This document shows, one piece after another, positions 1 to 56,559 of a stretch of 64,000 bases of DNA. The position numbers and the translations under genes were made by a program. The DNA is taken from NCBI GenBank assembly GCA_977030845.1, contig OZ365115.1, positions 34,720,001 through 34,784,000 of the forward strand, written 5' to 3'. The notes beneath the pieces were generated by a model that was not told the DNA's origin, did no database searches, and was given only the letters and a program-made list of their open reading frames with translations. Positions within the stretch are counted from its first letter, which is position 1, and each line of letters opens with the position of its first letter. Source of the stretch: Fimbriosthenelais zetlandica. Taxonomy: Eukaryota.

Positions 1-854
1 CCGTGAGACAGACAACCAGATAGTGGGGACAGTGATGTATTTTAAACATTGAAATAAACCAGGACTTTAGATAAGGCTATCTGAATCCAGAGTGAACATG
101 TCACTTTAACATGACCTTGATGCTTTATTAGCAGACATTCCTCATCTCATTAATCAAACCTAATGTCAAACATTCCATTTATACCATTCACAATGTCATG
201 TCAAGGACAGAGCTATGAACAAAGAGAGCTTTGCCTTCAGCAAGAATCATCCTTCATAATGACTTAAAGATGATTATCCTAGTCCAAATTTAAGGAAATA
301 CTTTTGCTACTTTTGCTAACTAGTAACAGTTCCCAACATAAATTTGATTTAGTTGAAGGCTCTCAGGGGTCTTAATTTGGCTTAAGGAACTATTTAACCA
401 AGTATAGTCAGAAATATGAGCTGCAGTTTCTCGTGTAGCTACAGACATAAAACTGCCAAGAATAATAATTATTCATTTTTCGAGCGTAGTGTTGTAATAT
501 ATTTCGTTATATTTTCTATACGTTTATGGTACAACATATGAATAACTTCTCATGTATTAAGGAAGCTATAATGTGCAACATGTGCAAAATGAAAAACAAG
601 TAGGCCTTAGATGCACAGGAAGTGACGTGGATGGTGCATGCGCAGTGAGATCTAGTGAGGCATTCTGGGAGAGGTGGTGATGGGTAAAATATGATTAGAT
701 TATTCACCGCCAGGTTAGAACAACACAGACAATTGTGTGTTATAGTCTATCCCGACTCACTGACAACCTTAGTTCACTCTTCAGACTCTCATCTCAACTA
801 TAAGAGAGAATCTTGCACTTGCAGTTTTCTGCTTGTTATTGACAGGCGAATTGA

Positions 855-912
855 GAGAGAGATTGAGAAAGAGATGGAGAAAGAGATGGAGAAAGAGATG
901 GAGAAGGAGAAG
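855..912. repeat. (GAGAAAGAGATG)n 12-mer repeat
   Basis: About 4 copies are visible; source of the EKEM pseudo-ORF. Confidence 0.85.
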
Positions 913-3734
913 GGTAGAGTCAAGGTAAAGAGATTAAGATGAAAAAAGCTAGAGAGGGGAAGAGTTGGGGAGCCGAGGAGTTGGAAGGCAAGCAGAAATA
1001 TCAATGGATGACTTATTTCTGCCTTGCTTTTCATTGCAACAACTGCAAAAGTTTCACGGGGTGAAAAGCCAAGGGTATCTGGCATTTAATAGCAACAAGA
1101 GTTACTGCAAGAAAACACCCTAGCAAGGTTAGCGGGATAGATTACGGTGCCATATGGATCTTCTAAGATGTGATGACCTTTCATGACCTTGTGAGTCTGG
1201 AAGAGGGAAACAAAATAACAGTTTGTATAAGGCGGGGCGTAGACTGGCTCTCACTCAGTCTCTCTGCTCCTCTCTACTCTCCTTCTCCTCTTCACAACTA
1301 CTTCACATTATATCGTCAGTATAAATCAATGATCAGAATGATTAAACTAAGTACTTTTACTTGACTCGGGAATGAAAGTTTTGTCAATACTTTTATACTT
1401 CCGAATGGACTCTAGACTGTATTTCTGGACAACTGTTGATTTAAAACGCATAAACATGTGTAGAAATCCTCAATTTAATCCAAATTAAGGGAATAATAGT
1501 TAGAGTGTTGCACAACAATACTTTACTTATGTTTGTGTAATTGTCTCATTATCATATCTTTGAGAAGTCATAACAGTCTGTTGCCGGGGGAAATATTATT
1601 ATTGTTCCATAGAAAAAGCATTTTGGTATGGAGACAAAATGTCCCAAATGTTCTTGAGCACATAGAGCACATTCTAGTCCCCTTCTGCTCTTCTTTGTTG
1701 AAACATTTTGTAAAACTTGAAATCAATTGATCAGACAAGTCATAAAACAGAGCAGTTTGTTTTGTAAAGTGTTGGACCCGCCTAGAGTCAATAGGATAAG
1801 TTAGGACGGGTCTACTAGCTGGAGCCGGAATGTTGGAGGAGGTCTACCTCCCCCCGAGCCATCCTTGAGACTGAAATCTCAACGTTACACTTCACTGATG
1901 GAATCAAAACAAAACACAAAATCCAAGAGCAAGGCTCGCCGCCGGACTTTGATGGTGTTTATTTTATTTGGTTCGCTTTGGTCAATCTTTATTCTAGCAG
2001 GTGTCAGGAGTAAGTTGATGCTCTTCCAAGTAAAATAACCAAATCAAGGGTAGTCAACCAATTCACCTATTTTGCTGGGTGTGTGTCGGGGGGTTGGGGG
2101 CGATATGGTGAGACCTCTGCCATGATTTTGCGTTGTTGAAACGTCTTTAAACCCCTATAAGCAAGGATCCCTGAGTCTGCTAAAGCAATAGATTCTTTTT
2201 TTTGAAAGATAATGTTTGGTTCTCTATGTCGAGTTTAAAACTTTATGTCGATGCCATTTATTCCTTGTATTTGGTCGTACTTGACTTATTCCCATGGCCA
2301 GCCCACAGCCAGGGACCCATGTTTCCAAGCATCTTCAAATATTTGGACATCCAAGCTGATCTAAGGCTGCACATCTGTATCTAGTCTCCTACATAGACAC
2401 CACTGTCCACTGTATCCATGAGGACCCTGGATGCCCCCCCCCCCCCACCCCCCACCCCCAACAAACCCAGGACGAGAGAAGCCCCATCTGTGATCCAGCT
2501 CCATAAAAACTGAGCAAACACCTACTGTCGTTTGACAGGTGAAGGGCGGTCATAAACTTTACATGGCTTCTCCCCTATTATCGCCCATGCTAACTAAAGG
2601 CTGTTCTCCACTGCTACGATTTCCCTTTTGACACAACTCTGACAACATATGCCGCAATGATCAGGGGAGAATGGTCTTTAGATCATTGATACATTAGATC
2701 TTTTTGATTTTCTGTTGCCAATGTTGCCCCCAATACATTATGTGTCATCAATGGAAAACAGCCTGAACGAAACTTGTAGTCTTACTTATGTGTGTCTAAA
2801 AACATACTGTGTCGGTATTGTATCGCACCAGTGAGGGACAGGCTTAAAGACTGGAAGCAACATGAGGAAGGAACCGTTTTTACATTGTGACAATTCAGAT
2901 CTTTTACTTCCTCAGTGGATTCTAAAGAACCGTTTTAAACTAAAACATATTGCTTGTACCAGGGGGTAAGCTGTACCGGGAGAATTGTCGTCCGTTTGAC
3001 TTCTCCAAGTGATTCTTTGTCTGATCCTGAGGTGATACAAAAACATGAAAGAGCACGATGTCACAGTCCGTCCTCTCAAACCTCGTAAATTGACGGAGAA
3101 GTAGGTGCCAGGGGTAGGACCATTGGGACAAGTCTAAAAAGTATGAAAACCATGATGATTCTGCTAGCTTGGTATCTCTCCCTATATCTATCTCTCCCTT
3201 TCCCTCCCTCTCTCTCTCCCTCCATCTCTTCCCCTGTCTCCCTTTCTCTGTCCCTCCGTCCCTCTGCCCCTCTGCCTCTCTCCCCCTCCCTCCCCCTCCC
3301 TCCCCCTCTCTCCCCCTCCCTCCCTCCCTCCCTCTCATGTCTCGCTATCTCTCCCTCTCCCTCTCTCCACACACTCTATTTTGAAGAGACTTGACCATCC
3401 TGGACATTAGGGTAATCTAAAATCCAGACCAGAGACGTGTCGTCTCTCTACTCAGACGTTCCTATAATAATGACCTTTCATTACAATTCAAGATGGCCGC
3501 CATATGGTCGTGAGTGACTGGTTGTTGACGGTGATATATGTCAATGGTTGCCTGGACAACAAGTGTCCCCCAACAGACATTACTTCCCTAAACCCTTACT
3601 CTCTCCCATCCCTTGGACCATTCATTTATAGACCAAAATACAATTTATAAACGAAAGAGATTCAAAGTAAGCGTTTAAATTTGTGAAGTCGATTTTGGTG
3701 CTGTAATATAGTATAAGGGTTTTTTTTATAATAC

Positions 3735-3928
3735 TTTTTTTTGGGTTGTAATAATTGATTTTTGGTTGTAATATTTGATTTTTGGTTGTAATATTTGATT
3801 TTTGGTTGTAATAACTGATTTTTTTGTTGTAATAATTGATTTTTTGGTTGTAATAATTGATTTTTTGGTTGTAATAATTGATTTTTGGTTGTAATAATTG
3901 ATTTTTGGTTGTAATAATTGATTTTTGG
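3735..3928. repeat. 20-21-bp minisatellite, about 9 copies
   Basis: The unit is TTTTT(T)GGTTGTAATAATTGA. It explains the spurious QKINYYN/PKNQLLQ ORFs. Confidence 0.92.
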
Positions 3929-4611
3929 CGGTAGTTGTGATGGATGTAGTTTGGGTGAGAGTGGGTTAAGCCTACGTCCACCCATGTCGACTCAGCCACC
4001 AGCTGGTAACATCTGATAGGTGGCGCTTATCTCAGGCGGTGTCTCACGCCATAGTGTCCCCTGTAAAAGCCGGTGTCTCAGCCCCGCCCCAGATAGTCCC
4101 CGCTATAAAGTTTGGGTGGCTAATGCTTATTTACAATCGGACAAGATCCAGTAGGATCTGACACTGAGGATCGGATAGCGCCCCCCAGATCCACGACCTT
4201 AACATGACCTTGACGTGACCTGAGAATGACCTTGACCTTAGAGATCAGATAGGAATGTGGAGAGAGTGTCAGTGGCGGGGATTCAGATGGCAGCCCGAGG
4301 CAGACAGAGATGTCACGTGATTAGACCAGACGCCTAATGGTGTTGACTGGATTTCTTTTTTCAAATCTGCTACTGAATGGGTCTACATCCCTTCTTCCCA
4401 GTCCCCCGCCCCCCAAATCCCGCTCTCCTCGCTGATAAGGACACACTCGGTGTGATCCATGTGAGGTCTGTGCTGGACTTTGGGGGCTAGACGGACTATA
4501 CCATCATTTGATGTATACACCTGTTTTTATGTTTGTTGAATTTTATTGAAAAATCCCGGATTCCTGTGATAACTAAGAGGGTGGGATTGCTCGGATATAA
4601 CATAGGTTGAA

Positions 4612-4683
4612 CCCCCCCCCCCCCGGGCCCCCCCCCGGGCCCCCCCCCCGGGCCCCCCCCCCGGGCCCCCCCCCCGGGCCCCC
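4612..4683. repeat. (C8-10 GGG)n GC-only tandem repeat, 5 GGG units
   Basis: Directly visible: C-runs are interrupted by GGG about every 12-14 nt. Confidence 0.9.
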
Positions 4684-7600
4684 TGTTGCAAAATCCTGAG
4701 ATAAGGAGACTCTCGTTGATGTGCGTGAGGACCGCCTGATACAGTTAATGTATACCACTCAACAACTACCCTGGTCCCCTGTCTTATCCTCCTCACTGAG
4801 GAATACCCCGGTACCAGGACAAGGATGTTATTAAATCACCTTTTATCGCCCACTCTTCACTCACCACTCTCGCCAATCAGTTTCAACTTTACGACTTCCA
4901 AAATTCCTTTCCTCTTCTTGTCTTCCTCCATTTTCCTCCGTTACGTTTTGTCTTCAAGTGCTGTACTTGATATTATGGCATCTATATAGATTTACTGTAG
5001 GAAGGCCATGATTTTTCAAGACTAAGAAAACTAAGTCTCTGTTGTTTATCCTCTCTTTGACATTTTTCTTTCATTTCTTTAGGAAATTTAATCTATCGTT
5101 TTACATTTTCTTGCTTTCAAAGTGGACTCAAAACTCCCATGGGAGAGGCTTATAATACTGATGGAATACAGTTGTCTTTTTTTTTGGTGAATATTTTTGA
5201 TATAAATTAATGATATGGAACTTAACCTATCCGAAATAACTATTCAACACTGTCCTCACAAGTCCCTAAAACCAGTGGCAGAGAAAACATAAAAAAAAAT
5301 ATGTTGTGGAAATCCGTGGATAAAGAAAAGTCTTCCACCATAGAGATGGTAATGTGATTTCTTTAGAGGAAAGCTTTGGCCGCCATTTTCTATTGATGTA
5401 GTCTCAAAAGTCGAGCAGTGATCCACTATGTGACTCTGATCCGATGGACATTGCTCATAGTGGAGGTGATTCAGGTCTCACCACACACAATACGCTGTAG
5501 TCTTCATTATCACACGTCAGCAGGTGTTTACCGGCTGCCGCGTCTTACCCCTGCCCTGAGACACTGTAGTGAGACCTGAACTGGTCACCGCCATTGATCC
5601 AATAACGTCTGCTTCTACCGCTGGATGGCGCCCCGGATCAATACATCCGCGCGGTCCTCGCATTATGTCCGTCCAACAGACCGGCCTCGGCTTATTCCAC
5701 ACGTAAAAAGAAGCGCTCGTTTCTGGTGAATTTATTGAAAGGTTCTGGGCCGTGTCTTCAATCAGTGGACTGACAAAGCGGGGCTGACATCCGCGCTAAG
5801 TCCTCCCGCGCGATGCCTGCACAATACGCGTCCACCAATTGACCATCGCGCAGTTGAGAAATGCCCTTGGCAGCGCTCCTGGTGGCCGTGAAGCGATCAT
5901 TTTAGAATGAAGGGCACAATCTTGTCTCTGGCTGGGAGGCGGTGCGGAAGCCATCGCTCAAACTCTGTTGTAATATCAGCGAGACGGGCCATTTTTAATG
6001 CACAGTCGTGGATTATTGGCATGGGGGGAGGGATGGTGGAGGGGTGAGGGTGGGGGGTGAGGGGTGAGGGGCTGACAAGTGAGGGAGGAGAGGAGGGGGA
6101 GGAGAAGGCTGGATGTCTAAAGAAAGACATCCAATTCACTGATCCATTTTCTCGTTTATTTCCTGAAAGTTGATACCTGAAATACGGAATTGTCTTCTGA
6201 TATATTTTGTCAATGATCTATGCGAGTCTTCTCTGAATTTATGATACAGATATGGTCCAACTTGGAGATAAATTTGGAGATAAAGAAAAACTAAAGTGAT
6301 GAATTAAATGTCTTAAAGATTGAGAAAACTGAAGAGTAAAGACTGACAAATTGTCTCAGCAAGTCATCTGAAAAATGTCTTGAAATGTTGCCTTTCTCTT
6401 AAATGTGATTGATTCTATTTTATTAAAATATGATCCTAACTTGGTTTGTACGTTTCCATGATGAAGACATGAGAATCTTTGTGGGTGTGGGTTGTGAAGC
6501 CCCTCCTGCTTCCCCCGCCGCTCCATTTGTCCACCACCCTTTACATCTACATGTCAGCATTATGACGGATCGCTTCACCGCCTGCGCTCGCGCCCGGACG
6601 CTCTTATTGCGCATGCTCAGCAAATTGAAAGGCGGAGTAACCAATGAGAAGTTGTCAATGCAGGTCAGGTGGTTTGCCCTGAGCGATATTCGGGGGTGTT
6701 TAGAGAGGGGATGAGTCGGACTAATTTGATATGGACACTGTTGTACATTTCATATTATCTCTGACACTTCCGCCCCAATATGGCTGACAGGGAGAGGCGC
6801 GCCACAGACGGAAAGGCGATTATTATTATGGATAAAATCCAGATGGTCGCCTCGCCTGAAGCTTCATTGAATACTGAGTGATGGGCTGAGAGGGGGAGGA
6901 ATGAGCGAGTGGAAACTGAAAGGCCATAGATTAAAACAAATCTGTCCTCACTCAAGAAGGATTTTTGAACCCAATGGTGGAACTTTTCAAAAGATGATGA
7001 CTTACTCTCAAGTGTGTGCTCTGAAGTAAAGGTTATCCTAGAAATTTCGGAATTTTAGAAACATTTTACTGAAACAATTTATAAGGAAAAGTCTGATGGG
7101 TAGTTCTGTTCTGTTCTTCTCATTTTGGAACAATTTCTAAGGAGGGTTGGGCGAGTGAAACAGCCAACACCCACCCCTGAATCTATACACGAGGCGCAGA
7201 GTCTGGAGTTTAAACACTCTAGATAAGAAGGATTGTCTCTTGTATTACAACTATTTGATAAATCACACTTGAATGTCCTCCTATTGAAGCGAGGCTGGAG
7301 GGGAACCCCCATGTCTAACAACTTGTGTGTATTTACAGTAAAAAAGAAATAAAACCAGCCTCTCTCTTAAAACAATAAGCGGCTTGTCAAGACCGTCTGC
7401 CTGAACCCAATGAGGTGGAACTCGAAGATGGAGAGAAAGGGTGGAACCTGGGAGGGAAGAGTCCAGCGGAGTTGGAACTCTCCAGTAAGAGATTTAGGTT
7501 TCAATAGGAATTCTACCAAATATTTTACCAAATATTATTGAAAGGTTTATTCTTGTAGGCATTGTTTCACTCATTTTGCAATGTTGGATCCGCCCTGCCC

Positions 7601-8834
7601 CCTATTCTTGAGGCTGATATTCCTCTATCTCTCCTTCTCTTTCTTTTTCTCACCCTCTCTTTCACTCTCTTGCTCACTCTCCCTCCCTTTCCATACCTCT
7701 CGACATATCGCCCTCTTTCCCTTTTCTATGTAGTTATTTTCAAATTTATGTGAAATGCCTCTTAGTTGAATAGATCTTTACAGTATACTGTAAACTTATT
7801 ATTTTAAGTTCTATATGAGTCGAAATCACCATCCATTCATTAAGACTATAGTCTTGGACGTTGATTGAAGGCCCTCCATTGAGGACATTGACCTGTATAG
7901 GTGGCGCTGGTGTCGAGGCGGTGGTTTACGGTACTAACTCTGGTCTGGACCGCTCTTGTGTATCTCAGTGTTTATATGGTGAAGCATTTAAGAGTGGCGA
8001 GGATGGGTGTTTGGTAACAATCTACTGTAAGGAGAGATGGACACACGGCTGAGTGTCTACTAGATCGGGTGTCTGCTTCACAGCTTGAATTCACTGAACG
8101 CCACGAAGAAGAGTCTTCCCTTGCGATTCATGCAACTTTTCATTGCGATTTCTTATTGTGATGTGAGTGTACTGTCTATGCCTTCTTGTGACAAGTCATA
8201 GGTGGTATCTGCTTCCATGTGGCATCTAATATAGGTCCTACCTTCTTGCAAAGGTGGAGCTAGTTTACAGAACGACAGAACAAGCAATGAAAACCCAAGT
8301 AGAGCTGACCTATAATAGCATCAGCTGTAGCAAATACTCCAAGAAAATTGTAATGAGAAATCCCTATTGGAGTTAGCCAATAAATGGGTACAAATTTGTC
8401 ATTCATGAAAAATGTCTAAATGGTCCCATTTGGAGAAACCTGCGAGAGTTTGGCGAGCTCTCGCCGGCCTTAAACAATAGACAGTAGAGAGATCTTTGTT
8501 ATAAAGTGTCGTGTAAATCTCTCATGTTTACTGTTAGACATGTCAGACTCCGGTACAGCCAGGACAGACAGAGATGACCTTTGTATACCTACACCCCTGT
8601 CTTCTATCTCTGAGACGCTCTCTGATAAGATGAAAAGATCCAACGGGATTATTTTACTCTTTTTATGGCACGAGGAACATCAATGTCGTGATATCCACCT
8701 CCCAAATAGTCCTGATGCTCCGGATATTTCTTCATGTATTTTATTATCCCATTCAATACATTCCAGTTAGTTGAATTGCCCATATCATTTTAAATCAATT
8801 GATCATTTTCAAATTAATTGGTCATTTTTAGTTT

Positions 8835-47800: not shown

Positions 47801-50076
47801 TAATTAGGGCTGTTCTAATTGTGACTGTTTGTATGGGTGTTAGATGGATGGAGGTATAATGAATGTATAGCCTCCTGTAGGTGTTATATACACATTATAT
47901 GGACGACCTCCCTGCTGTCACACTGTCACATATCGTGTTATTATAGCGTCAAATGGTGACTGTATACAATCAATGATTGACAGACAGCGCATCATTACCG
48001 CGGATCATAGGTGATAATCACAGACAATCAATGTTAACGCATTATTCATTATCCTTACAAAATGTCTTAAACCATCTTTAATTCTTTAAAACAATACTTT
48101 AAGAACATTTTATGCAAGCGGCTTGCCCAAAGAGGCAAGAGGCATGCCTAAACGAAAAAAAATTGTCCATATTCCCAGCTCAAAGATAGTTCAATTCGAA
48201 ATTGTTGCAAATGAATACCTTTCAATGCGAGAGACAAATGAGTATTCTTGTTACTTGAGAGGAAATGAGTACTATTAGAGAGGCAATAGAGTATAGTTAT
48301 GGAGAGAATTCAGATTTGTTCATAGATATTGTGTTATCTTTCGGGATAAAATCAAGGATAGTAGAGTTACTAGGATATTGTAAATCCTTGATTTATAGAG
48401 TATCCTTGATAAAATCCCAATTAATACATTGTCTTCTTACTATATCCCTTGATCAGCCAGTTTTTTTTTAATATGACAGTTCTCCTTTGAAAAAAAATTC
48501 TAAATCTGAACAAATGAAATCAAAGTTGGCCCCCTGTGGGGAGGATTTGTGAAGAACGTTGAGGGAGGTCTTGTACTGTTTTCTCATCCACGCGTCTCAG
48601 ACGCATGCTAATCATGTTCATGACGTCATCACATGTTAATACCCATGTTAACTAAAGTCTGGTGTCAGAAATAGACACCTATATAACACCCACCTCTATT
48701 GTTCGGATTAAGACCACAAAAGAGGGATGAGCCGATGTTAGCTTTCATCTAATGCCATGAACAGCTTCCCTGGTTCTAAAAACGGGTCCTAGATTTACCT
48801 TGTTGCTCGGAATCTTTCATATTGAAGCTAAACTTTAATCCCAACATCTATATTGGTAAAAGAAGAGTATTTCCATAGATTTGGAAAAAGAAAAGTATAT
48901 TATTTATTAGAAACAAATAGATATTTAATTGAAGCAAGTTCCCAGATATTACTCTGAAATATTAATAAACTCTTCCTTGCTGTTCCTCATTTGTCGTCAC
49001 CTTCATTTTCAACACCTGGTTTTGAGCTGAGCCCAGCCTACCTATACATGTAGAAGTCATACAGAATTTTTAATAACCCGTTCCCGTGTATACATGTTTT
49101 CTCGGTACCCACACACATTATAATAAATATGATTAGACTGGGCCAGGCTTTCTGCCTTGCTTCACTCCGTCAATAACATCTATACAATATGAGAACTACA
49201 TTCCTCAAATGAGCTTTGAATATTGAATGAATGGACCATCTGCCAGTCCGGCATGTGTAGGGCATTTAGTCCTCATGGCGGAGAGCCCCTTCAACTAGCC
49301 AACCTAGAGAAGGGAGTCACTGAGACAGAGAGAGGAGAAAGACAGAGAGATAGAGACATAGACAGAGAGAGAAGGATAGGGAGAGACAGTGACAACGCGA
49401 CGTCAGGGAAGGGCAGACAGAAAGACAGAGAGACGTATAAGACATGCAGAAATAGAGACAGAAAGAGGGTGAGACTGAGTCTCAGACTCCATGGGACAGG
49501 GAGAGACGGAGATAGACAGATACACGTAGATAGATAGACAGAAAGAAACGAGAAGAGAGTGGTTGAGAAATAATGTAAATACACAGATAGAGAGCAGGAG
49601 AGAGAGAAACTGAGAGAGGAAAGAGAGAAACTTTGACATACTATTAGGAGAGAAACTGACAGAGAGGAGTGAAAAGGGAGGGGGAGATAAGAAGAGAGAG
49701 AGAGAGGGGGCATGTGTGGAGGGTACATTATGGGATGGCATTATGTTTGTACAGATGGCCCTCACATGTTTGCATGTTACTTCATTTCACGTGGAAGTAA
49801 CAAGTAGAGAATATGTCACTTGTAAATACTCTCCCCACCCTCCTCCACACCCCCCCCCCCCCGGCCTTCCTCCTCCCTCTCCCCCTCTGCCTTTCTCCTC
49901 GCCCTCCGCCTCATCATAGACGTAGATAGATGGACCGCCAACTCTGAAGTCTCGCGCATTGACTTCAATGCAAATAACGCCGGCCACGAGAAGCCGCGAG
50001 AAACAGGATAGTTGACTTCCGGTTACATTCTCACACGCTTGTGGGTGTGGTTGTACTCTGCTATTTTGTCGTAAAT

Positions 50077-51800
50077 ATGGATTACAATGAATTCAATGAT
50101 GTGTTAGAGGTAAGTTTCCACTTATTTATTTGATATCCAACCAGGGTAAGACAAACAGAGAAGTTGTTATATGATTTAATCGTATTTATGTGAGGTAAAT
50201 GCCGGCGAAGTTGCCGGGTCACGGACCTGTCTGCCACTAGTGTCAGGCCCACTGCCGCTGTCAGAGAGGGACACAGTTCCCAGCCCGTTCTAGTGTCTCG
50301 TCTAGCCCCTACTCAGGCTACTATAGGCTAGATAAAATATTCATCCCCTGGGTCCCCGACAGGACAGGGAGCCGATCATATTGTCTAAACTGTAGGCTTG
50401 TATTTGTACATCAAAATGTAAGCCTAGTCCTAGGCCCCTCCTTGCTTCGGGAATTGTGGTTGATAACGCTTCCAATGAAAAAAGGTTTCCCCATGTCTGA
50501 TGTAGGGGCTAATTTTTTTTTAAATGGTCAGGATTCTGAGGAAAATGCTATAATTCAAGTAGCTTAGGCCTGCATAGGCCTAGTCAGTTCGTGTAGGTAG
50601 GCTAGCCTCAATTGTATTATAAAGCATTAAAGGACCTAAATTATGGAATCATCTCCCAAATTATTTACGGGAAATAAAATCTCTCTATTCATCAAATAAA
50701 ACATTTCTTTATGTAACTTAAATCAACAATTAATACCGTAATAAGTGATAATGTTTCAACATATTCTAATATAATAATATATATCAATTAATGTTCAAAC
50801 CTCATGTTCTGTAAAAAGTCCCTGTATATGTAAAGGGAACATATAAGCCCTTCGAGGTTTCTGTTCTTATATAAATTTTATTTTTGTCATTTCCAACCTG
50901 TTAATTGTTACTTTGTTATTTTGAATAAAAAAATAAAAAATTCCGGGGGGGGGGGGGGGGGGGGTGGTAGGCTAATTTCAATCAGGCCATAGATAGGCTA
51001 GGCCTAACGCTATTATTAGGCTTAGTCCTATGCATAACCATCTGTATTGTAATACACTTGGCATTACATTTACTTTATCGGCCATAGATAATAGTTCTCT
51101 ATCATCTATACATAACCCATGCCATAGTTATAGCCATAGTCTAGGACGATATGGCCTATTATAGGTGTTTCTGCCACCACGTCTGATGATGTGCCTCGCT
51201 TTGAAATATATTAAAATGTTAGGCCCAATGATTTGATTTCCACGGCATTCCATTGTCACCCAAAAAATTTCTGTGTTGATTGCCAGTAACCTAACTGTTT
51301 GTAATTAACAATTTTAGGTCCTCACGGCAGGCCTACATGATTATAATCACTGAAACACAAGGCCAAGGTCTAGCAAAATGACGGTGAGTAAATGACATTT
51401 GGATAATTACAAAAATAGTGTCAAGTTGTAAGGTCCGCGGGGACCTACAGAATTTCTTAATTTAATATATATGGATACCCGTAATATTACTGCAAATACA
51501 TTAGTTCAATTTAACTATTTTAAGATCTTAAGGTTAAACTAGACTGCTGTTATATTGTTCATGAAAATATACAGTGAATGTTCATATTATTACGGATATA
51601 TGTAGTATTAATATTTCTTATTTTCATGATACAGAAGGATGGACTAGCATTGGATTCCACATTGGATAAACGAGTGCTAAACACCGGGTATTGGCAGTTG
51701 TGCCTGTGTCCAAGGATGAATATAATTCGAGTAGGCTAGAAAAATTCTTAGAAGATGTCAAAATAAGAGATCAATTGTTACTGTTTTTACTGTGTTGATT
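50077..51800 (+). pseudogene. Degenerate spliced gene remnant inside the P-like element
   Basis: Exon-like pieces: 50077-50109 (ATG...GAG|GTAAGT, MDYNEFNDVLE); 51318-51383 (ttttAG...ACG|GTGAGT, 66 nt, VLTAGLHDYNH*NTRPRSSKMT with one in-frame stop); and a piece from 51635 (ttttcatgatacAG|, KDGLALDSTLDKRVLNT then, after a frameshift, VLAVVPVSKDEYNSSRLEKFLEDVKIRDQ). The phases are compatible (0/0). The product was not recognised. Confidence 0.45.
50821..50942 (+). mobile_element. Possible truncated 3' tail of a non-LTR (L2/CR1-like) retroelement
   Basis: A small stem-loop (GAACATATAAGCCC-TTCG-AGGTTTCTGTTC) is followed by a T-rich stretch and an AATAAAAAAATAAAAAA tail. No ORF or TSD is visible. 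Confidence 0.3.
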
Positions 51801-52831
51801 AAACTAGTAACTTTGATATATGTATCAGTTACAAATATTGAATATTTTTAGAATATCATTGTTTTATCACTTTGTCTTTGCGTACCGTACCTTGGCGCAT
51901 ATGATATATGAAGTTATTTTTTTTATTTATAGGCCTATTTTTTTAAATTTAACAATGAATTCGTCTGTGATATGAACATTTTCTGACAGATAATAAAACA
52001 TATAATGAAAAAATGGATAGCTTATAATTATTTCTTCACTTGAAGGGGCCGATCATAAAGGCTAGGCTAGAATATGCCTGAAAATCCTTGCTATGAATGT
52101 TTTGTATTATTAGGCCTATAGTACAGTACGTACTAATATAGTAACACTTATTATAGACAAATACCGGTAATTATTTAATATTTAAGTAGGAACATGGTGG
52201 TAGAAAAACCTAAAGGCTCTAGACCAGGTTTTTTCAGTAGGCCTACGGTACCGGTAGGCTTATCCTAGGACTAGGCTTCTTTAAATTTAGCTTAAATCAC
52301 CACCCCTGGAATAAGGGCTAGCCTAGGCCGCGAATATAGGCCTATATATAGCCTCGATTCGAAAAATGGCTTTAGGCCGCCTGGAGATTCAATTTCAGAC
52401 GAAGATACCGGTAGGCCTACCTTACTGGTACTTTCTTCATTGCCTTGTAAGTTGTAGGCCTAGCCCCATCCCAGGCCTAGCGGAAATATTTATAGAGTTC
52501 ACACTGGTTCAAACATCTGCTTGGATTAAGGCCGAGGCTATACCCGGTAGGCCGTAGGCTAGGCTTATAACCTATCGAGCTATAGGCCTACATATTCAGG
52601 CCCAAGGGCTAGGCAGACATGGTTTTAGTTTCGGCAACACTTTTTCAGAGGCATCAGAACTGATGAGGCCTGACAGAGTTGTTATGAAAGATAATATCCA
52701 GCATACCGGTACCAATTAAAATCTGAGGATTGAAGTAAAGATCTTCAGGATAACACAAGTAAATACTATCACCGACTAGGCCCTGATGTTGTTACACGGC
52801 CTAGCGGTAGGCTTACTGCTGTAGCCTAGGC

Positions 52832-52884
52832 CATAGATAATAGTAGAACTACTATTATCTATAGTAGAACTACTATTATCTATG
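52832..52884. mobile_element. Nested 53-bp palindromic mini-element with CATAG...CTATG ends and a 7-bp TSD
   Basis: The sequence is CATAGATAATAGTAG-AA-CTACTATTATCTATG (15-bp perfect inverted repeat) with an internal 21-bp tandem duplication. It is flanked by CCTAGGC at 52825-52831 and 52885-52891. Confidence 0.78.
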
Positions 52885-52974
52885 CCTAGGCCTAAAGTCT
52901 GAATGTAGGCATAGTCAGTGACCGTGCATGTCAGTGACAGTGTAGACGGCTGTAGCCAGTGACACTCGCCTTAC

Positions 52975-53091
52975 TCCTATATTTACCAAAGATTCAAGGC
53001 GTTTCCGCAATGATAATGCTTCCGCAATGAATTCCTTGGACGTCTTTACCCCGGAGCACCATTGAAATTGTAATTCTAACAATTATATCAT
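52975..53091 (-). pseudogene. Possible degenerate first exon of a second, convergent gene in the P-like element
   Basis: The minus-strand reading MI*LLELQFQWCSGVKTSKEFIAEALSLRKRLESLVNIG (39 codons, one stop) starts about 60 nt inside the right TIR block and ends at a phase-0 GGA|GTAAGG donor. No homology was recognised. Confidence 0.28.
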
Positions 53092-54922
53092 TGTTTTTAT
53101 GGACCATCGTCCAGACACTCCCGCTTCGCAAAGCTAGTCAGCTGGCAGCCGGAAGTCAACTATCCTGTTTACAGGCCGCGCATGCGTGCCGCGCGCTCGA
53201 GGGAGTTGGCGGTCCATCTATCTACGTCTATGGCCTCATTGAGTCAGTTGCATTTATTAAAAAATACATTCTTTCTTCTAAATGGACTATTTTTGGAATT
53301 GGTGCACCAGATCTGACACAAATTGTCAGAGCCGACAGATGAGGAAACGGTCAGGAATATTGACTTTGATTTGAACTGACTATAATAGGTCTGTGTTATG
53401 CATCTGATAAAGCTTGCTTTGTAACTTCGTTATATTGTTTTTTTTAAATTGGCGCTGAACATATGCGCTATTGATATCAAAATAAAATCTAACTAAAGTG
53501 TTATAAAATAATTATACTTATACTTGAAGAAATAGGACTAGGGATGGACTCATTTCTGCATTCCCTATCATTTTAATAAAATCTTCCTGAAATGCCCCTA
53601 ACTTTTAAAAGTCCTGTATATTCCCTCTAGTAGGCCTATATTCTATACTCACGTTAAGTCAGATACATACAACCCTCAATATCATTCAGCGTCAAATTTA
53701 TTAGCAAAAACTCACATGGAAGTCTATTCTTTTATGTCAATGTTTATGAGAATTCCTGTAACAAATTGCACTGAGTAAACTGCCTAACCCCACACTATCG
53801 ACCTTAGAAAGAAAAGCTCCCCGGTGAAGAATATATCCCGTGTGTTTTACACATCAAGGTAATAAATTATGGAATAATCATGGTCTCTCATATGGTGTTG
53901 TCATCAAGCTGGTTTGTATGAAAAGACAATGTAATCATTGGTACAATTTGTACCAGGGTGATGTGACATCACTCCACAGGTCTGATGGTGGCTGGTGCTT
54001 TATAACTCCCACTTGTCCAGGCTATTTCCATGCTATAATGGACACAGTATGTCATTCCTCATACATTAATATGTATTATTCCACGGAATTTCATGCTTTG
54101 TTGCATCCGCCATATCATATGCCCATCATTGAGAAAGACCTGTTTCTACAATATGCTTTATGATTTTTTTTTAATGAATACAAATTGGAACCGTAATATT
54201 TATATTGCAATAAATCATATACTTAGAATCGATGGGTGGTAGTAGGCCTAAACCTTTTTTTATCTATTTTCATGGTTTTCACCTTCGTTGGGATATGTGT
54301 ATTCTATAGCCTACAAAGACCACTATAATTATTTAAAGAGAATTTAGTAAGTTGTTATGAATGATACTAAGTCCATTTAAAGAAACAGAAGCCCCCTTTA
54401 AGATATCAGGCGGCTCGTGACTCCATGACACCTGTCACACACGTTTGTGACGTCTGTCAAACGTCGAGTTGCTATGGTGACGAGTGACGTCCCTGAACGT
54501 CATGGTACGTCTCGCTGCCAGCTTCATTCGATCAGGTTCAACTCTCTACCCCCAAACATATTATTCTAATTTTATCTGGATATTATATAATGGAAAATAT
54601 TAAAATCTGACGGTAAAATTGATCAGTTTTCTTCATTAATCATACTAAGACAATATTCTTGGGGGACGCTCATCAAAAGCTTGAAGAAATATTTCTGATA
54701 TTGTTATTATGTTTAAATATATACTAAATTAAAGTCCTGGGCAAGTTTAATCGTGTCTGTCTCCACCTGATCATGGAAACAAACATCTTCCCTGCTATGT
54801 TCAGTACACATTTCCCCTGTCCTCTGACAAGCAGGTCCTTTGTTTATATTTTAATGTCATTCAATGAAACTCCATCAAGATCCACGCTGGGCCACCATAA
54901 CGGCTTACCTTACACTGACATT

Positions 54923-55207
54923 CCTATACATTTAACATTGGTTCTCCCCTATTATCGCCCTATACATTTAACATTGCTTCTCCCCTATTATCGCCCTATA
55001 GTTTAAAATTGCTTCTCCCCTCTTATCGCCCTATAGTTTAACATTGCTTCTCCCCTATTATCGCCCTATACGTTAAAATTGCTTCTCCCCTCTTATCGCC
55101 CTATAGTTTAACATTGCTTCTCCCCTATTATCGCCCTATACTTTAACATTGCTTTTCCCCTATTATCGCCCTATATGTTTAACATCGGTTCTCCCCTATT
55201 ATCGCCC
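54923..55207. repeat. 35-36-bp minisatellite, 8 copies
   Basis: The unit is CCTATAGTTTAACATTGCTTCTCCCCTATTATCGC. The copies are contiguous with no spacers, so this is not CRISPR. Confidence 0.92.
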
Positions 55208-56559
55208 AGTAGGATCTCATTGTTTTCATCATTTATGTCCAACGGTTTAGGCTTAAATACTGACTTTAAATGATATTGTAGAGACTGACTTCTTTCCTTT
55301 GCCCATGACACCACCGTGAGTAAGATTTCATCCCACTAGAAAGCAGGAGAACTAGTCCTGAAATCATATTTCTCCCTAACTGATATAAGTAAGGAAGGTC
55401 AAAGATTGTTGAAGTTAGATTTCTTTAAAGGGAGAGTTTATTAGTGAAGCATGTTTTGAGAACCTGTGCTATAAGCCTAATTATAGTGAAAGCAGTGATG
55501 ACACATACAAGCTGTAGTTTACACTGATTGAGAAATTAACCATGAGAGAATCACATTTTCCTGTCACAACTACAGACGCCCGCCTGTACTAATGATAGCT
55601 GTCACCAGTCCACGCCTCTTCTCGCTATATCTGACAGTCCCCTGTCACCCCACCACCCTCCCCCCACCCCCACCCCCCGTCACAACTCTCCTATCACGTC
55701 TCTCCATCCATCAACACCTCCTCCTCCCACCTCTCGTCCCACATCTCGCCACTGCGAGACACGGCGAGAATCAATCTCATCTGGAGATTGCTGATTGGTC
55801 CATCCCTTTTGATGCTCACGTCATGACGTATGACGTTTTGATGACGTGTGGGATGACGTCGTGGCGTTGTGGGAGTTGTGAGGGCTGGTGATCAGATCAG
55901 ACATGTTGCTGTTTTTCTCAGACACTCCTCTTGCTATAAGACGGTCCCTGGGGAGGTGAAGGGGCAGGGACTGATCAAAGATTCTGTAAAGGTGTTGGGG
56001 CAAAGGGGGGGGGGGGTCATCGGTATTGTGGGCGTGGAGGGGCAAGAAAGGGTTGGCCATCAGTTGTGTGGACAAAAGTGAGAGTCATAATATGTCTTTT
56101 CCCTTTGCTTTTTGTCCCTGAGACCCTTAAATCATTGTCTGTTCAGAACAAGCTACCTGTGACCCAAGTCATATTATGCTTCAAGTTAAAATTTTGTAAA
56201 GCTTGTACTGATGTTTTATTAATAAGATTTAAATCTTATGGACTCTCAAGTCCACCTTCCCCACCCCTCCCCAGCATCTCAGCACCCCCCCCCCCCCTCC
56301 CCCTCACATCTCCCCTTCGCCCGATCTCATCTTAGATTCAAAGATGGCGACGTGTAGCGGTCGTCTTGGTAGCAGTGGGCGTGACCTTGGCGGTCTCTGA
56401 GATGGCGGGGTATTGAGGGTGATATGAAGACCATATAAACCTGGCGTCCTCTGGGATCAGCCGTATAGATATGACCCGAGGCCTGTCTGTGGCCTGTGAC
56501 ATGGATAGGGAGGGTCCAGTAGCAATGTCCACCTCCTGGTCATCTCTCATATGTCATCC

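What the first reader, a model, noticed from the sequence alone, without database searches (positions are those of the whole stretch)
52825..52891. A 32-bp-core hairpin that appears to have transposed: minimal P-type mini-element
Seen: a 15-bp perfect inverted repeat with a 2-nt loop (plus a 21-bp internal duplication, 53 bp in total), the same CATAGA...TCTATG ends as the host element and its own perfect 7-bp TSD. A decayed look-alike (CATAGATAATAG-TTCT-CTATCATCTATA) lies at about 51084-51111. Inference: an exceptionally small mobilisable unit consisting of nothing but abutting TIRs, far shorter than typical MITEs. Alternatively it is an internal-deletion scar of a larger insertion.
Basis: partly seen in the sequence, partly recalled or inferred. 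Interest (0 to 1): 0.7.

Follow-up and report, generated by a model that had tools for sequence, protein, structure and literature searches.

The report
Excision scar of a P-like transposon
The 53-base hairpin is most likely the scar left when a larger cut-and-paste transposon jumped out of this spot, not a tiny transposon in its own right. About 50 such scars across the genome show that the enzyme cuts about 18-19 bases inside each transposon end, as the fruit-fly P element enzyme does.

Summary
Window 52832-52884 is a 53-bp palindrome-like block flanked by a perfect 7-bp duplication (CCTAGGC). Sister copies of the host repeat lack exactly these 60 bp.

The interpretation as a self-mobile mini-element is not supported.
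- The hairpin ends are the outer 15-19 nt of the 33-bp terminal inverted repeat (TIR) of a 6.1-kb non-autonomous element. That element has three 99%-identical copies with 7-bp duplications.
- Genome-wide, 47 short hairpins (28-53 bp) show 27 different centres. No end keeps more than about 20 of the 33 TIR bases.
- One-sided forms exist, such as 18 nt + 1 nt.
- The commonest centres (32-mer at 12 loci, 29-mer at 5) are what two 18-19-nt 3' overhangs give when joined through terminal microhomology.
- This matches published Drosophila P-element excision repair junctions, where the overhang is 17 nt.
- The host element's own family has 15 such scars.

The best reading is therefore a P-type excision footprint: a known kind, new organism.

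One oddity remains. An identical 53-mer lies at an unrelated locus with a different duplication. It could be a recurrent repair outcome, a copy made during repair, or, least likely, true re-mobilisation. No P transposase could be tied to this family.

The parts
52822..52822 (+). T at position -3 of the target motif T-NN-[7 bp]-NN-A
   Evidence: T at -3 in 33 of 37 reconstructed target sites, including the 3 full-length elements; sequence
52825..52831 (+). Left copy of the 7-bp target-site duplication CCTAGGC
   Evidence: present once in sister host copies
52832..52849 (+). Remnant of one transposon end: TIR bases 1-18 (19 if the next T is counted)
   Evidence: Identical to bases 1-18 of the 33-bp TIR of the 6.1-kb elements L046-L048
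52850..52869 (+). 20-nt centre made only of re-copied TIR pieces; equivalent to a 21-bp tandem duplication of the common 32-mer scar
   Evidence: D6, exact 21-nt repeat; decomposition (19 + 15 bases from the ends, 19 bases of filler); templated insertions of this kind are listed for Drosophila P excision repair (PMC2895639)
52870..52884 (-). Remnant of the other transposon end: TIR bases 1-15 on the minus strand
52885..52891 (+). Right copy of the 7-bp target-site duplication CCTAGGC
52894..52894 (+). A at position +3 of the target motif
   Evidence: A at +3 in 35 of 37 sites
49915..53232 (.). Host element: a related P-like non-autonomous repeat with TIR starting CATAGACGTAGATAGATGG, duplication GCCTCAT at 49908-49914 and 53233-53239, and the same T(-3)/A(+3) target motif
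   Evidence: ends and duplication read directly; sister copies; 15 footprints of its own family
51083..51110 (+). Look-alike of a 29-mer scar, inherited with the host family; no duplication
   Evidence: spanned without a break by at least 10 sister copies

Best explanation
The block is an excision footprint.

Proposed sequence of events:
1. A member of a P-like cut-and-paste family (33-bp TIRs, 7-bp target duplication, now represented by three 6.1-kb non-autonomous copies) inserted at CCTAGGC inside an older related element.
2. A transposase supplied in trans later cut it out.
3. As in the Drosophila P element, the cut on one strand lies at the element tip and on the other about 18-19 nt inside the TIR. 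Each flank therefore kept a 3' single-stranded tail carrying the outermost 18-19 TIR bases, next to its copy of the duplication.
4. Host end joining annealed the two identical tails through 1-3 nt of terminal microhomology and filled in, giving the common 32-bp 'hairpin'. Here a further round of copying added 21 templated bases.

Shown: the anatomy, the empty site, the family-wide retention limit, the diversity of junctions and the fit to overhang joining. Inferred: the polarity of the overhang, the repair pathway and the P-type transposase. The scar itself is most likely inert.
For: - Source element. The full elements have a 33-bp perfect TIR and 7-bp duplications, and are 99% identical to each other. 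Only 8 real TIR ends exist in the genome.
- Retention limit. Of 92 sites with TIR bases 5-18 intact, 84 leave the TIR sequence by base 19-22. There are no intermediates between these and full elements.
- Junction diversity. 47 short hairpins of 28-53 bp have 27 distinct centres. 34 have perfect and 7 have one-mismatch 7-bp duplications.
- One-sided scars with duplications exist (18+1, 18+0 and 16+5 bases).
- Fit to overhang joining. An 18-nt overhang explains 21 of 47 loci as simple joins, and a 19-nt overhang explains 19 of 47. With a 19-nt tail, the 32-mer (12 loci) has 2 nt of terminal microhomology and the 29-mer (5 loci) has 3 nt. Overhangs of 20 nt or more explain almost none.
- Drosophila precedent. 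P{wa} repair junctions have the same layout: duplication, up to 17 nt, microhomology or templated insert, up to 17 nt, duplication. Some classes recur (PMC2895639 Table 1). The 17-nt staggered cut and the internal transposase-binding sites are described in PMC7776569.
- Independent replication. The host family, with a different TIR sequence, has 15 scars of 24-41 bp keeping at most 17 nt per end.
- Shared target motif. Scars, full elements and the host element all show T-NN-[7]-NN-A, the same TSD+3 geometry as the 14-bp P target motif (PMC2577343).
- Local context. One scar lies 1.66 kb from a full copy, and two scars lie 414 bp apart.
- Empty sites in sister host copies.
Against: - An identical 53-mer lies at C27:9069290-9069342 with unrelated flanks and a different duplication (GGTAGGC/GGTAGGT). 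Independent formation of the same 21-nt insertion is unexpected. In the Drosophila table each complex insertion was seen once.
- No locus was seen in both the occupied and the scarred state. No sequencing runs were listed, so excision at this site is inferred, not observed.
- No transposase gene lies in the family's copies. None of the 38 P-transposase-like loci could be tied to these TIRs.
- There are many scars (about 50-90) for only 3-5 extant copies.
Confidence: 0.85

Rival explanations
1. Self-mobile mini-element. The 32/53-bp hairpin is cut out and reinserted by the family's transposase as the smallest possible non-autonomous element.
For: The same 32-mer lies at 12 loci and the same 53-mer at 2 unrelated loci, each with its own 7-bp duplication and the family's target motif.
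Against: - The hairpins hold only 12-19 of 33 TIR bases and none of the roughly 100-bp subterminal inverted-repeat region of the full elements.
- In Drosophila P the transposase-binding sites lie inside the TIRs, not at the tips.
- Cuts 18-19 nt inside both ends would overlap in a 32-bp unit.
- 27 distinct centres occur in 47 loci, and one-sided forms exist.
- The recurrent simple forms are those predicted by overhang microhomology.
Confidence: 0.05
2. A scar whose centre was copied from elsewhere. Excision happened here as in the best explanation, but the break was repaired by copying another footprint. The TIR-bearing tail invaded the 53-mer at the other locus, or the reverse, which explains the identical 53-mers at two loci.
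For: Identical complex 53-mers with different duplications and unrelated flanks. From general knowledge, not tested here: P-element breaks in Drosophila can be repaired from ectopic templates that share P-end homology.
Against: Only 15-19 nt of homology is available on each side. No other complex centre is shared between independent loci. Alternatively, a 21-bp slippage bounded by an AT/AT microhomology on the common 32-mer could recur on its own.
Confidence: 0.12
3. Internal-deletion derivative. A full element lost its interior through interrupted gap repair or deletion, leaving only its ends.
For: Both element tips and both duplications are kept.
Against: Deletion breakpoints should scatter through the element. 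Instead no copy keeps between about 21 nt and the full length. The limit falls inside the perfect 33-bp TIR and is seen again in a second family.
Confidence: 0.03

Closest known systems
Drosophila P-element excision footprints (P{wa} repair junctions; 17-nt 3' overhangs; Beall and Rio 1997 as cited in PMC7776569; Chan, Yu and McVey 2010, PMC2895639)
   Same: Both target duplications are kept. Each side keeps up to a fixed number of outermost TIR bases, well short of the whole TIR. Junctions form by 1-4 nt microhomology, blunt joins or templated insertions. A few junction classes recur. One-sided products occur.
   Different: About 18-19 nt are kept instead of 17. The duplication is 7 bp instead of 8 and the TIR 33 bp instead of 31. 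These are natural, inherited scars in a non-insect invertebrate genome rather than products of a laboratory assay. The transposase responsible is unidentified.
MITEs / miniature non-autonomous DNA transposons
   Same: Short, non-coding, bounded by inverted ends and target duplications, present at many loci.
   Different: MITEs keep complete, functional TIRs and a shared internal sequence and amplify as a unit. These hairpins keep only part of the TIR, differ in their centres and include one-ended forms.
Other P-superfamily elements with 7-bp duplications (Galileo, 1360; PMC4168063, PMC3698922, listed)
   Same: 7-bp target duplication, TIR-bounded cut-and-paste elements, non-autonomous derivatives.
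   Different: No sequence relation was tested. Galileo has very long foldback-like TIRs. Footprint anatomy was not compared.
Footprints of Tc1/mariner and of hAT/Transib/Mutator elements (general knowledge)
   Same: Donor-site scars left by cut-and-paste excision and end joining.
   Different: Tc1/mariner scars keep only 2-3 TIR bases. hAT, Transib and Mutator excision makes hairpins on the flanking DNA and leaves no TIR bases. Remnants of 18-19 nt are so far a P-type signature.

Membership tests
P-type excision footprint | Both copies of the target duplication are retained around the remnant, and the uninterrupted target exists elsewhere | tested here: met
   CCTAGGC lies on both sides. Sister host copies carry one CCTAGGC and lack 60 bp.
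P-type excision footprint | Each side keeps no more than the stagger length of outermost TIR bases (17 nt in Drosophila), far less than the TIR | tested here: met
   Greedy retention is at most 20 of 33 in 47 loci. 84 of 84 non-element sites leave the TIR by base 19-22. A second family keeps at most 17.
P-type excision footprint | Heterogeneous junctions: microhomology, blunt joins, templated insertions, one-sided losses | tested here: met
   27 junction types; one-sided scars; fit to 18-19-nt overhang joining; compared with PMC2895639 Table 1.
P-type excision footprint | The same site seen occupied by the full element in another individual or haplotype | not testable with these tools
   No sequencing run was listed for the locus.
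P superfamily of DNA transposons | Transposase with a THAP DNA-binding domain and an RNase H-like catalytic domain, encoded by the element or shown to act on it | tested here: inconclusive
   The 6.1-kb copies have no open frame over 129 aa. The two broken copies hold only nested retroelement genes. The genome has 38 Tnp_P_element matches, including a multi-exon THAP-plus-catalytic gene at L081. None could be linked to these TIRs. The only DNA similarity to L081 is a shared high-copy repeat.
P superfamily of DNA transposons | 7-8-bp target duplication and TIRs of a few tens of bp | tested here: met
   7 bp in 3 of 3 full copies and 34 of 47 scars; 33-bp perfect TIR.
P superfamily of DNA transposons | Palindromic target motif reaching 3 bp beyond each side of the duplication (14 bp in Drosophila P) | tested here: met
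   T at -3 (33 of 37 sites) and A at +3 (35 of 37) give a 13-bp symmetric motif, with the geometry described in PMC2577343. The preferred bases differ from P.
MITE / mobilisable mini-element | Complete ends sufficient for transposase binding and cleavage | tested here: not met
   Only 15-19 of 33 TIR bases are kept and none of the subterminal inverted repeat. Whether this suffices was not tested biochemically.
MITE / mobilisable mini-element | Copies at different loci share one internal sequence, showing amplification from a master | tested here: inconclusive
   The 32-mer is at 12 loci and the 53-mer at 2. There are 27 centres in all, and the recurrent simple ones are predicted by repair microhomology.

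The most novel reading that the evidence does not exclude
The identical 53-mers at two unrelated loci with different target duplications show that a footprint can be propagated as a unit. This could happen by transposase acting on a 53-bp pair of partial ends, which would be the smallest mobile DNA unit known in animals. It could also happen by break repair that copies one footprint into another excision site, a form of scar-to-scar gene conversion.
Probability: 0.12. Interest if true: 0.65.

Novelty: new member of a known kind. Interest (0 to 1): 0.4.

Why it matters
As a mini-transposon the hairpin would have been remarkable. As an excision scar it is an ordinary consequence of cut-and-paste transposition.

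The set of scars still has some value.
- It gives sequence-only evidence that the unusually long staggered cut of the Drosophila P transposase (17 nt) is shared, at about 18-19 nt, by P-like elements of a distant invertebrate. The cleavage chemistry of P/THAP9-type transposases has been measured in very few systems.
- It provides a natural catalogue of about 50-90 inherited germline end-joining products from one defined pair of 3' tails. This could be used to read the host's microhomology and templated-insertion repair habits.
- It is a caution for annotation: short TIR-TIR palindromes with perfect target duplications should not be scored as MITEs without checking how much of the TIR they keep.

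Tried and rejected
- Coding capacity. The 6.1-kb elements were scanned for open frames and nothing credible was found.
- The two solitary true TIR ends (L094, L095) were followed in the hope of an autonomous copy. They are copies broken by a DIRS-like element (reverse transcriptase plus tyrosine recombinase) and a Penelope-like element (GIY-YIG plus reverse transcriptase).
- The weak DNA similarity between the 6.1-kb element and the intron of a P-transposase gene (L081/L082) proved to be an unrelated high-copy repeat nested in both (438 candidates). It is no link.
- A positional link between TIR hits and the 38 P-transposase-like loci was sought by comparing coordinates. None lies within 100 kb.
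- Read evidence for occupied or empty alleles: no run was listed.
- A segmental-duplication explanation for the second 53-mer was rejected. Flanks are unrelated beyond the block, and the duplications differ in the same way on both sides.
- Two other pairs of identical hairpins (C30:822930 with C30:1390207, and C39:4343382 with C40:50732) do share flanks and are duplicated DNA or haplotigs.
- Earlier notes of this scan hold nothing on this hairpin family.

Full report
THE OBSERVATION

Window 52825-52891 reads: CCTAGGC, a 53-bp block, CCTAGGC.
- The block starts with CATAGATAATAGTAG and ends with its exact reverse complement.
- It contains an exact 21-bp tandem duplication, 52840-52860 and 52861-52881 (D6).
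- The arm next to the 2-nt loop pairs 14 of 15, because 52863 is A (I23). The perfect partner is the distal arm.
- CCTAGGC alone is not rare in the window (7 hits against 5.5 expected). The duplication therefore needed independent proof.

That proof exists. The surrounding DNA is a copy of a repeat family. In at least 7 sister copies the two alignment pieces overlap by 9 bp exactly at the site. Three sisters aligned directly lack exactly 60 bp and keep a single CCTAGGC (alignment A1). Something did insert here and duplicated 7 bp.

WHAT THE ENDS BELONG TO

The 15-mer end occurs 151 times in the 447-Mb genome, against 0 for the reversed control.
- Three pairs of ends lie 6.1-6.8 kb apart. These are three 99%-identical elements with a perfect 33-bp TIR (CATAGATAATAGTAGAACTGGATTGCCAGCTTC), weaker inverted similarity out to about 100 bp, and 7-bp duplications.
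- They have no credible open frame, so they are non-autonomous.
- Only 8 genuine TIR ends exist in the genome. Two of these belong to copies broken by nested retroelements.

THE HAIRPINS AS A POPULATION

A pattern requiring 12 TIR bases at each end, at most 30 bases apart, finds 48 places against 0 for the control. These amount to 47 loci by flanks, including one inverted duplicate pair.
- Lengths run from 28 to 53 bp.
- There are 27 different sequences.
- 34 loci have perfect and 7 have one-mismatch 7-bp duplications.
- No end keeps more than 20 of the 33 TIR bases.

Every genomic site with TIR bases 5-18 intact was listed: 92 sites. Eight continue as real TIRs. The other 84 leave the TIR sequence by base 19-22. 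Nothing lies between 'about 19 bases' and 'whole element'.

Sites holding a single 15-mer are mostly asymmetric versions. Examples are 18 bases of one end plus 1 or 0 of the other, or 16 plus 5, still bracketed by 7-bp duplications. Others are ends followed by unrelated DNA. Such one-ended forms cannot be mobile elements.

FIT TO A MECHANISM

The Drosophila P transposase cuts one strand at the element tip and the other 17 nt inside the 31-bp TIR. This leaves 17-nt 3' tails on the donor flanks (PMC7776569; PMC10983969).

Sequenced repair junctions after P{wa} excision have exactly the anatomy seen here (PMC2895639, Table 1). The layout is: duplication, up to 17 TIR bases, 1-3 nt of microhomology or a blunt join or a templated insertion, up to 17 TIR bases, duplication. 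A few classes were recovered many times, and one-sided losses occur.

I tested which tail length best explains the present junctions as simple joins of two full tails.
- 18 nt explains 21 of 47 loci.
- 19 nt explains 19 of 47. With a 19-nt tail, the 32-mer (12 loci) has 2 nt of terminal microhomology and the 29-mer (5 loci) has 3 nt.
- 17 nt explains 17 of 47, but with little terminal pairing.
- 20 nt or more explains almost none.

In the 32-mer the two central AA bases, the 'loop', are the mismatched middle of the overlapped tails. This also explains why AA and TT versions both occur.

The window's 53-mer is this 32-mer plus 21 re-copied bases bounded by an AT/AT microhomology. That is a templated insertion or slippage of the kind listed in the Drosophila tables.

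INDEPENDENT REPLICATION

The host element is at 49915-53232, with duplication GCCTCAT at 49908-49914 and 53233-53239. It belongs to a related family with a different TIR (CATAGACGTAGATAGATGG...). The same kind of search finds 15 scars of 24-41 bp for that family. Each end keeps at most 17 bases, and the control finds 0.

TARGET SITES

Thirty-seven target sites were reconstructed: 34 scars and 3 full elements. They show T three bases before the duplication (33 of 37) and A three bases after it (35 of 37). The window site (T 52822, A 52894) and the host element's own site obey the same rule.

The motif is symmetric and spans the duplication plus 3 bp on each side. This is the geometry of the 14-bp palindromic P target motif (PMC2577343), although the preferred bases differ. 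It shows that scars and full elements were integrated by the same kind of enzyme. It does not by itself separate the two models.

FAMILY ASSIGNMENT

Pointing to the P superfamily:
- the 7-bp duplication;
- the 33-bp TIR;
- the target-motif geometry;
- above all, the 18-19-nt TIR remnants.

The genome holds 38 Tnp_P_element matches, among them a multi-exon gene with THAP-like, helix-turn-helix and catalytic exons (L081). I could not tie any transposase to these TIRs.
- No hit lies near a TIR.
- The one DNA similarity found is a shared high-copy repeat.

Membership is therefore structural, not proven.

WHAT DOES NOT FIT

An identical 53-mer lies at C27:9069290-9069342. Its flanks are unrelated, and its duplication is different (GGTAGGC/GGTAGGT) in the same way on both sides. 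It is therefore an independent integration site.

Possible explanations:
- the same 21-bp duplication arose twice on the commonest scar;
- one break was repaired by copying the other scar;
- the 53-mer itself moved.

The third option is disfavoured. The block lacks most of the TIR and all subterminal sequence. Cuts 18-19 nt inside both ends would leave almost nothing between them. No other complex centre is shared between independent loci. It cannot be excluded without experiments.

Also unobserved is an occupied allele at any scar locus. No sequencing run was listed for the locus.

THE LOOK-ALIKE AT 51083-51110

It resembles a decayed 29-mer scar but has no duplication. At least 10 sister host copies span it without a break. 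If it is a scar, it predates the spread of the host family. It is not evidence for mobility.

VERDICT

- The interpretation as a minimal mobile element is not supported.
- The inferred stagger is about 18-19 nt.
- This scan had not noted the hairpin family before.

Noticed in passing
genome-wide; window 52822 and 52894; host element flanks 49905 and 53242: The P-like families here share a strong symmetric target motif T-NN-[7-bp duplication]-NN-A (33 of 37 and 35 of 37 sites). It could be used to recognise degenerate insertion sites and to find the autonomous partner.
   Followed up: partly
genome-wide, e.g. G000:C19:21059722-21059753: The host element's own family (TIR CATAGACGTAGATAGATGG...) has 15 short TIR-TIR scars of 24-41 bp, several of them recurrent (a 24-mer at 3 loci, a 28-mer at 3 loci). 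Their flanks and duplications were not fetched.
   Followed up: partly
L039, L037, L024, L006; G000:C21:12692881: Several scars carry fillers of the type TAGGCC / GCCTAG / AGGCCT. These probably copy TAGGC-rich flanks, since many target sites end in TAGGC. This may bear on the AGGCCT/TAGGCCTA saturation noted for this transposon interior (s1-188523).
   Followed up: no
G000:C1:3366701-3366732 against the full element at C1:3358918-3365041; L044 1501-1532 and 1915-1943: One scar lies 1.66 kb from a full-length copy, and two scars lie 414 bp apart. This suggests short-range hopping, as known for P elements.
   Followed up: no
L094 1265-7089; L095 about 625-8400: Two copies of the 6.1-kb family are interrupted by retroelements. 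One is DIRS-like (reverse transcriptase plus a tyrosine recombinase match below the Pfam cut-off). The other is Penelope-like (GIY-YIG plus reverse transcriptase).
   Followed up: partly
L046 4126-4693; L081 1962-2450: A high-copy repeat of roughly 250-600 bp (438 first-look candidates) is nested both in the 6.1-kb element and in an intron of a P-transposase-like gene. Some hits suggest it has inverted ends.
   Followed up: partly
L081 (G000:C27:6872774-6875947), with a near-twin at L082: A multi-exon P-transposase-like gene has THAP-like, coiled-coil, Tnp_P_element and catalytic exons, all open. It could be an active transposase or a domesticated THAP9-like gene.
   Followed up: no
window 54933-55212: A tandem array of a 35-bp unit, about 8 copies at 72-97% identity (D1). 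Not examined.
   Followed up: no
window 50945-50965 and 49850-49865: Long G and C homopolymer runs lie inside and just before the host element. Length variation among sister copies probably sits there.
   Followed up: no
G000:C11:8373113-8373164: One scar carries a direct duplication of TIR bases 2-18 (two left-end copies in tandem before a short right-end remnant). This is another templated-insertion form.
   Followed up: no
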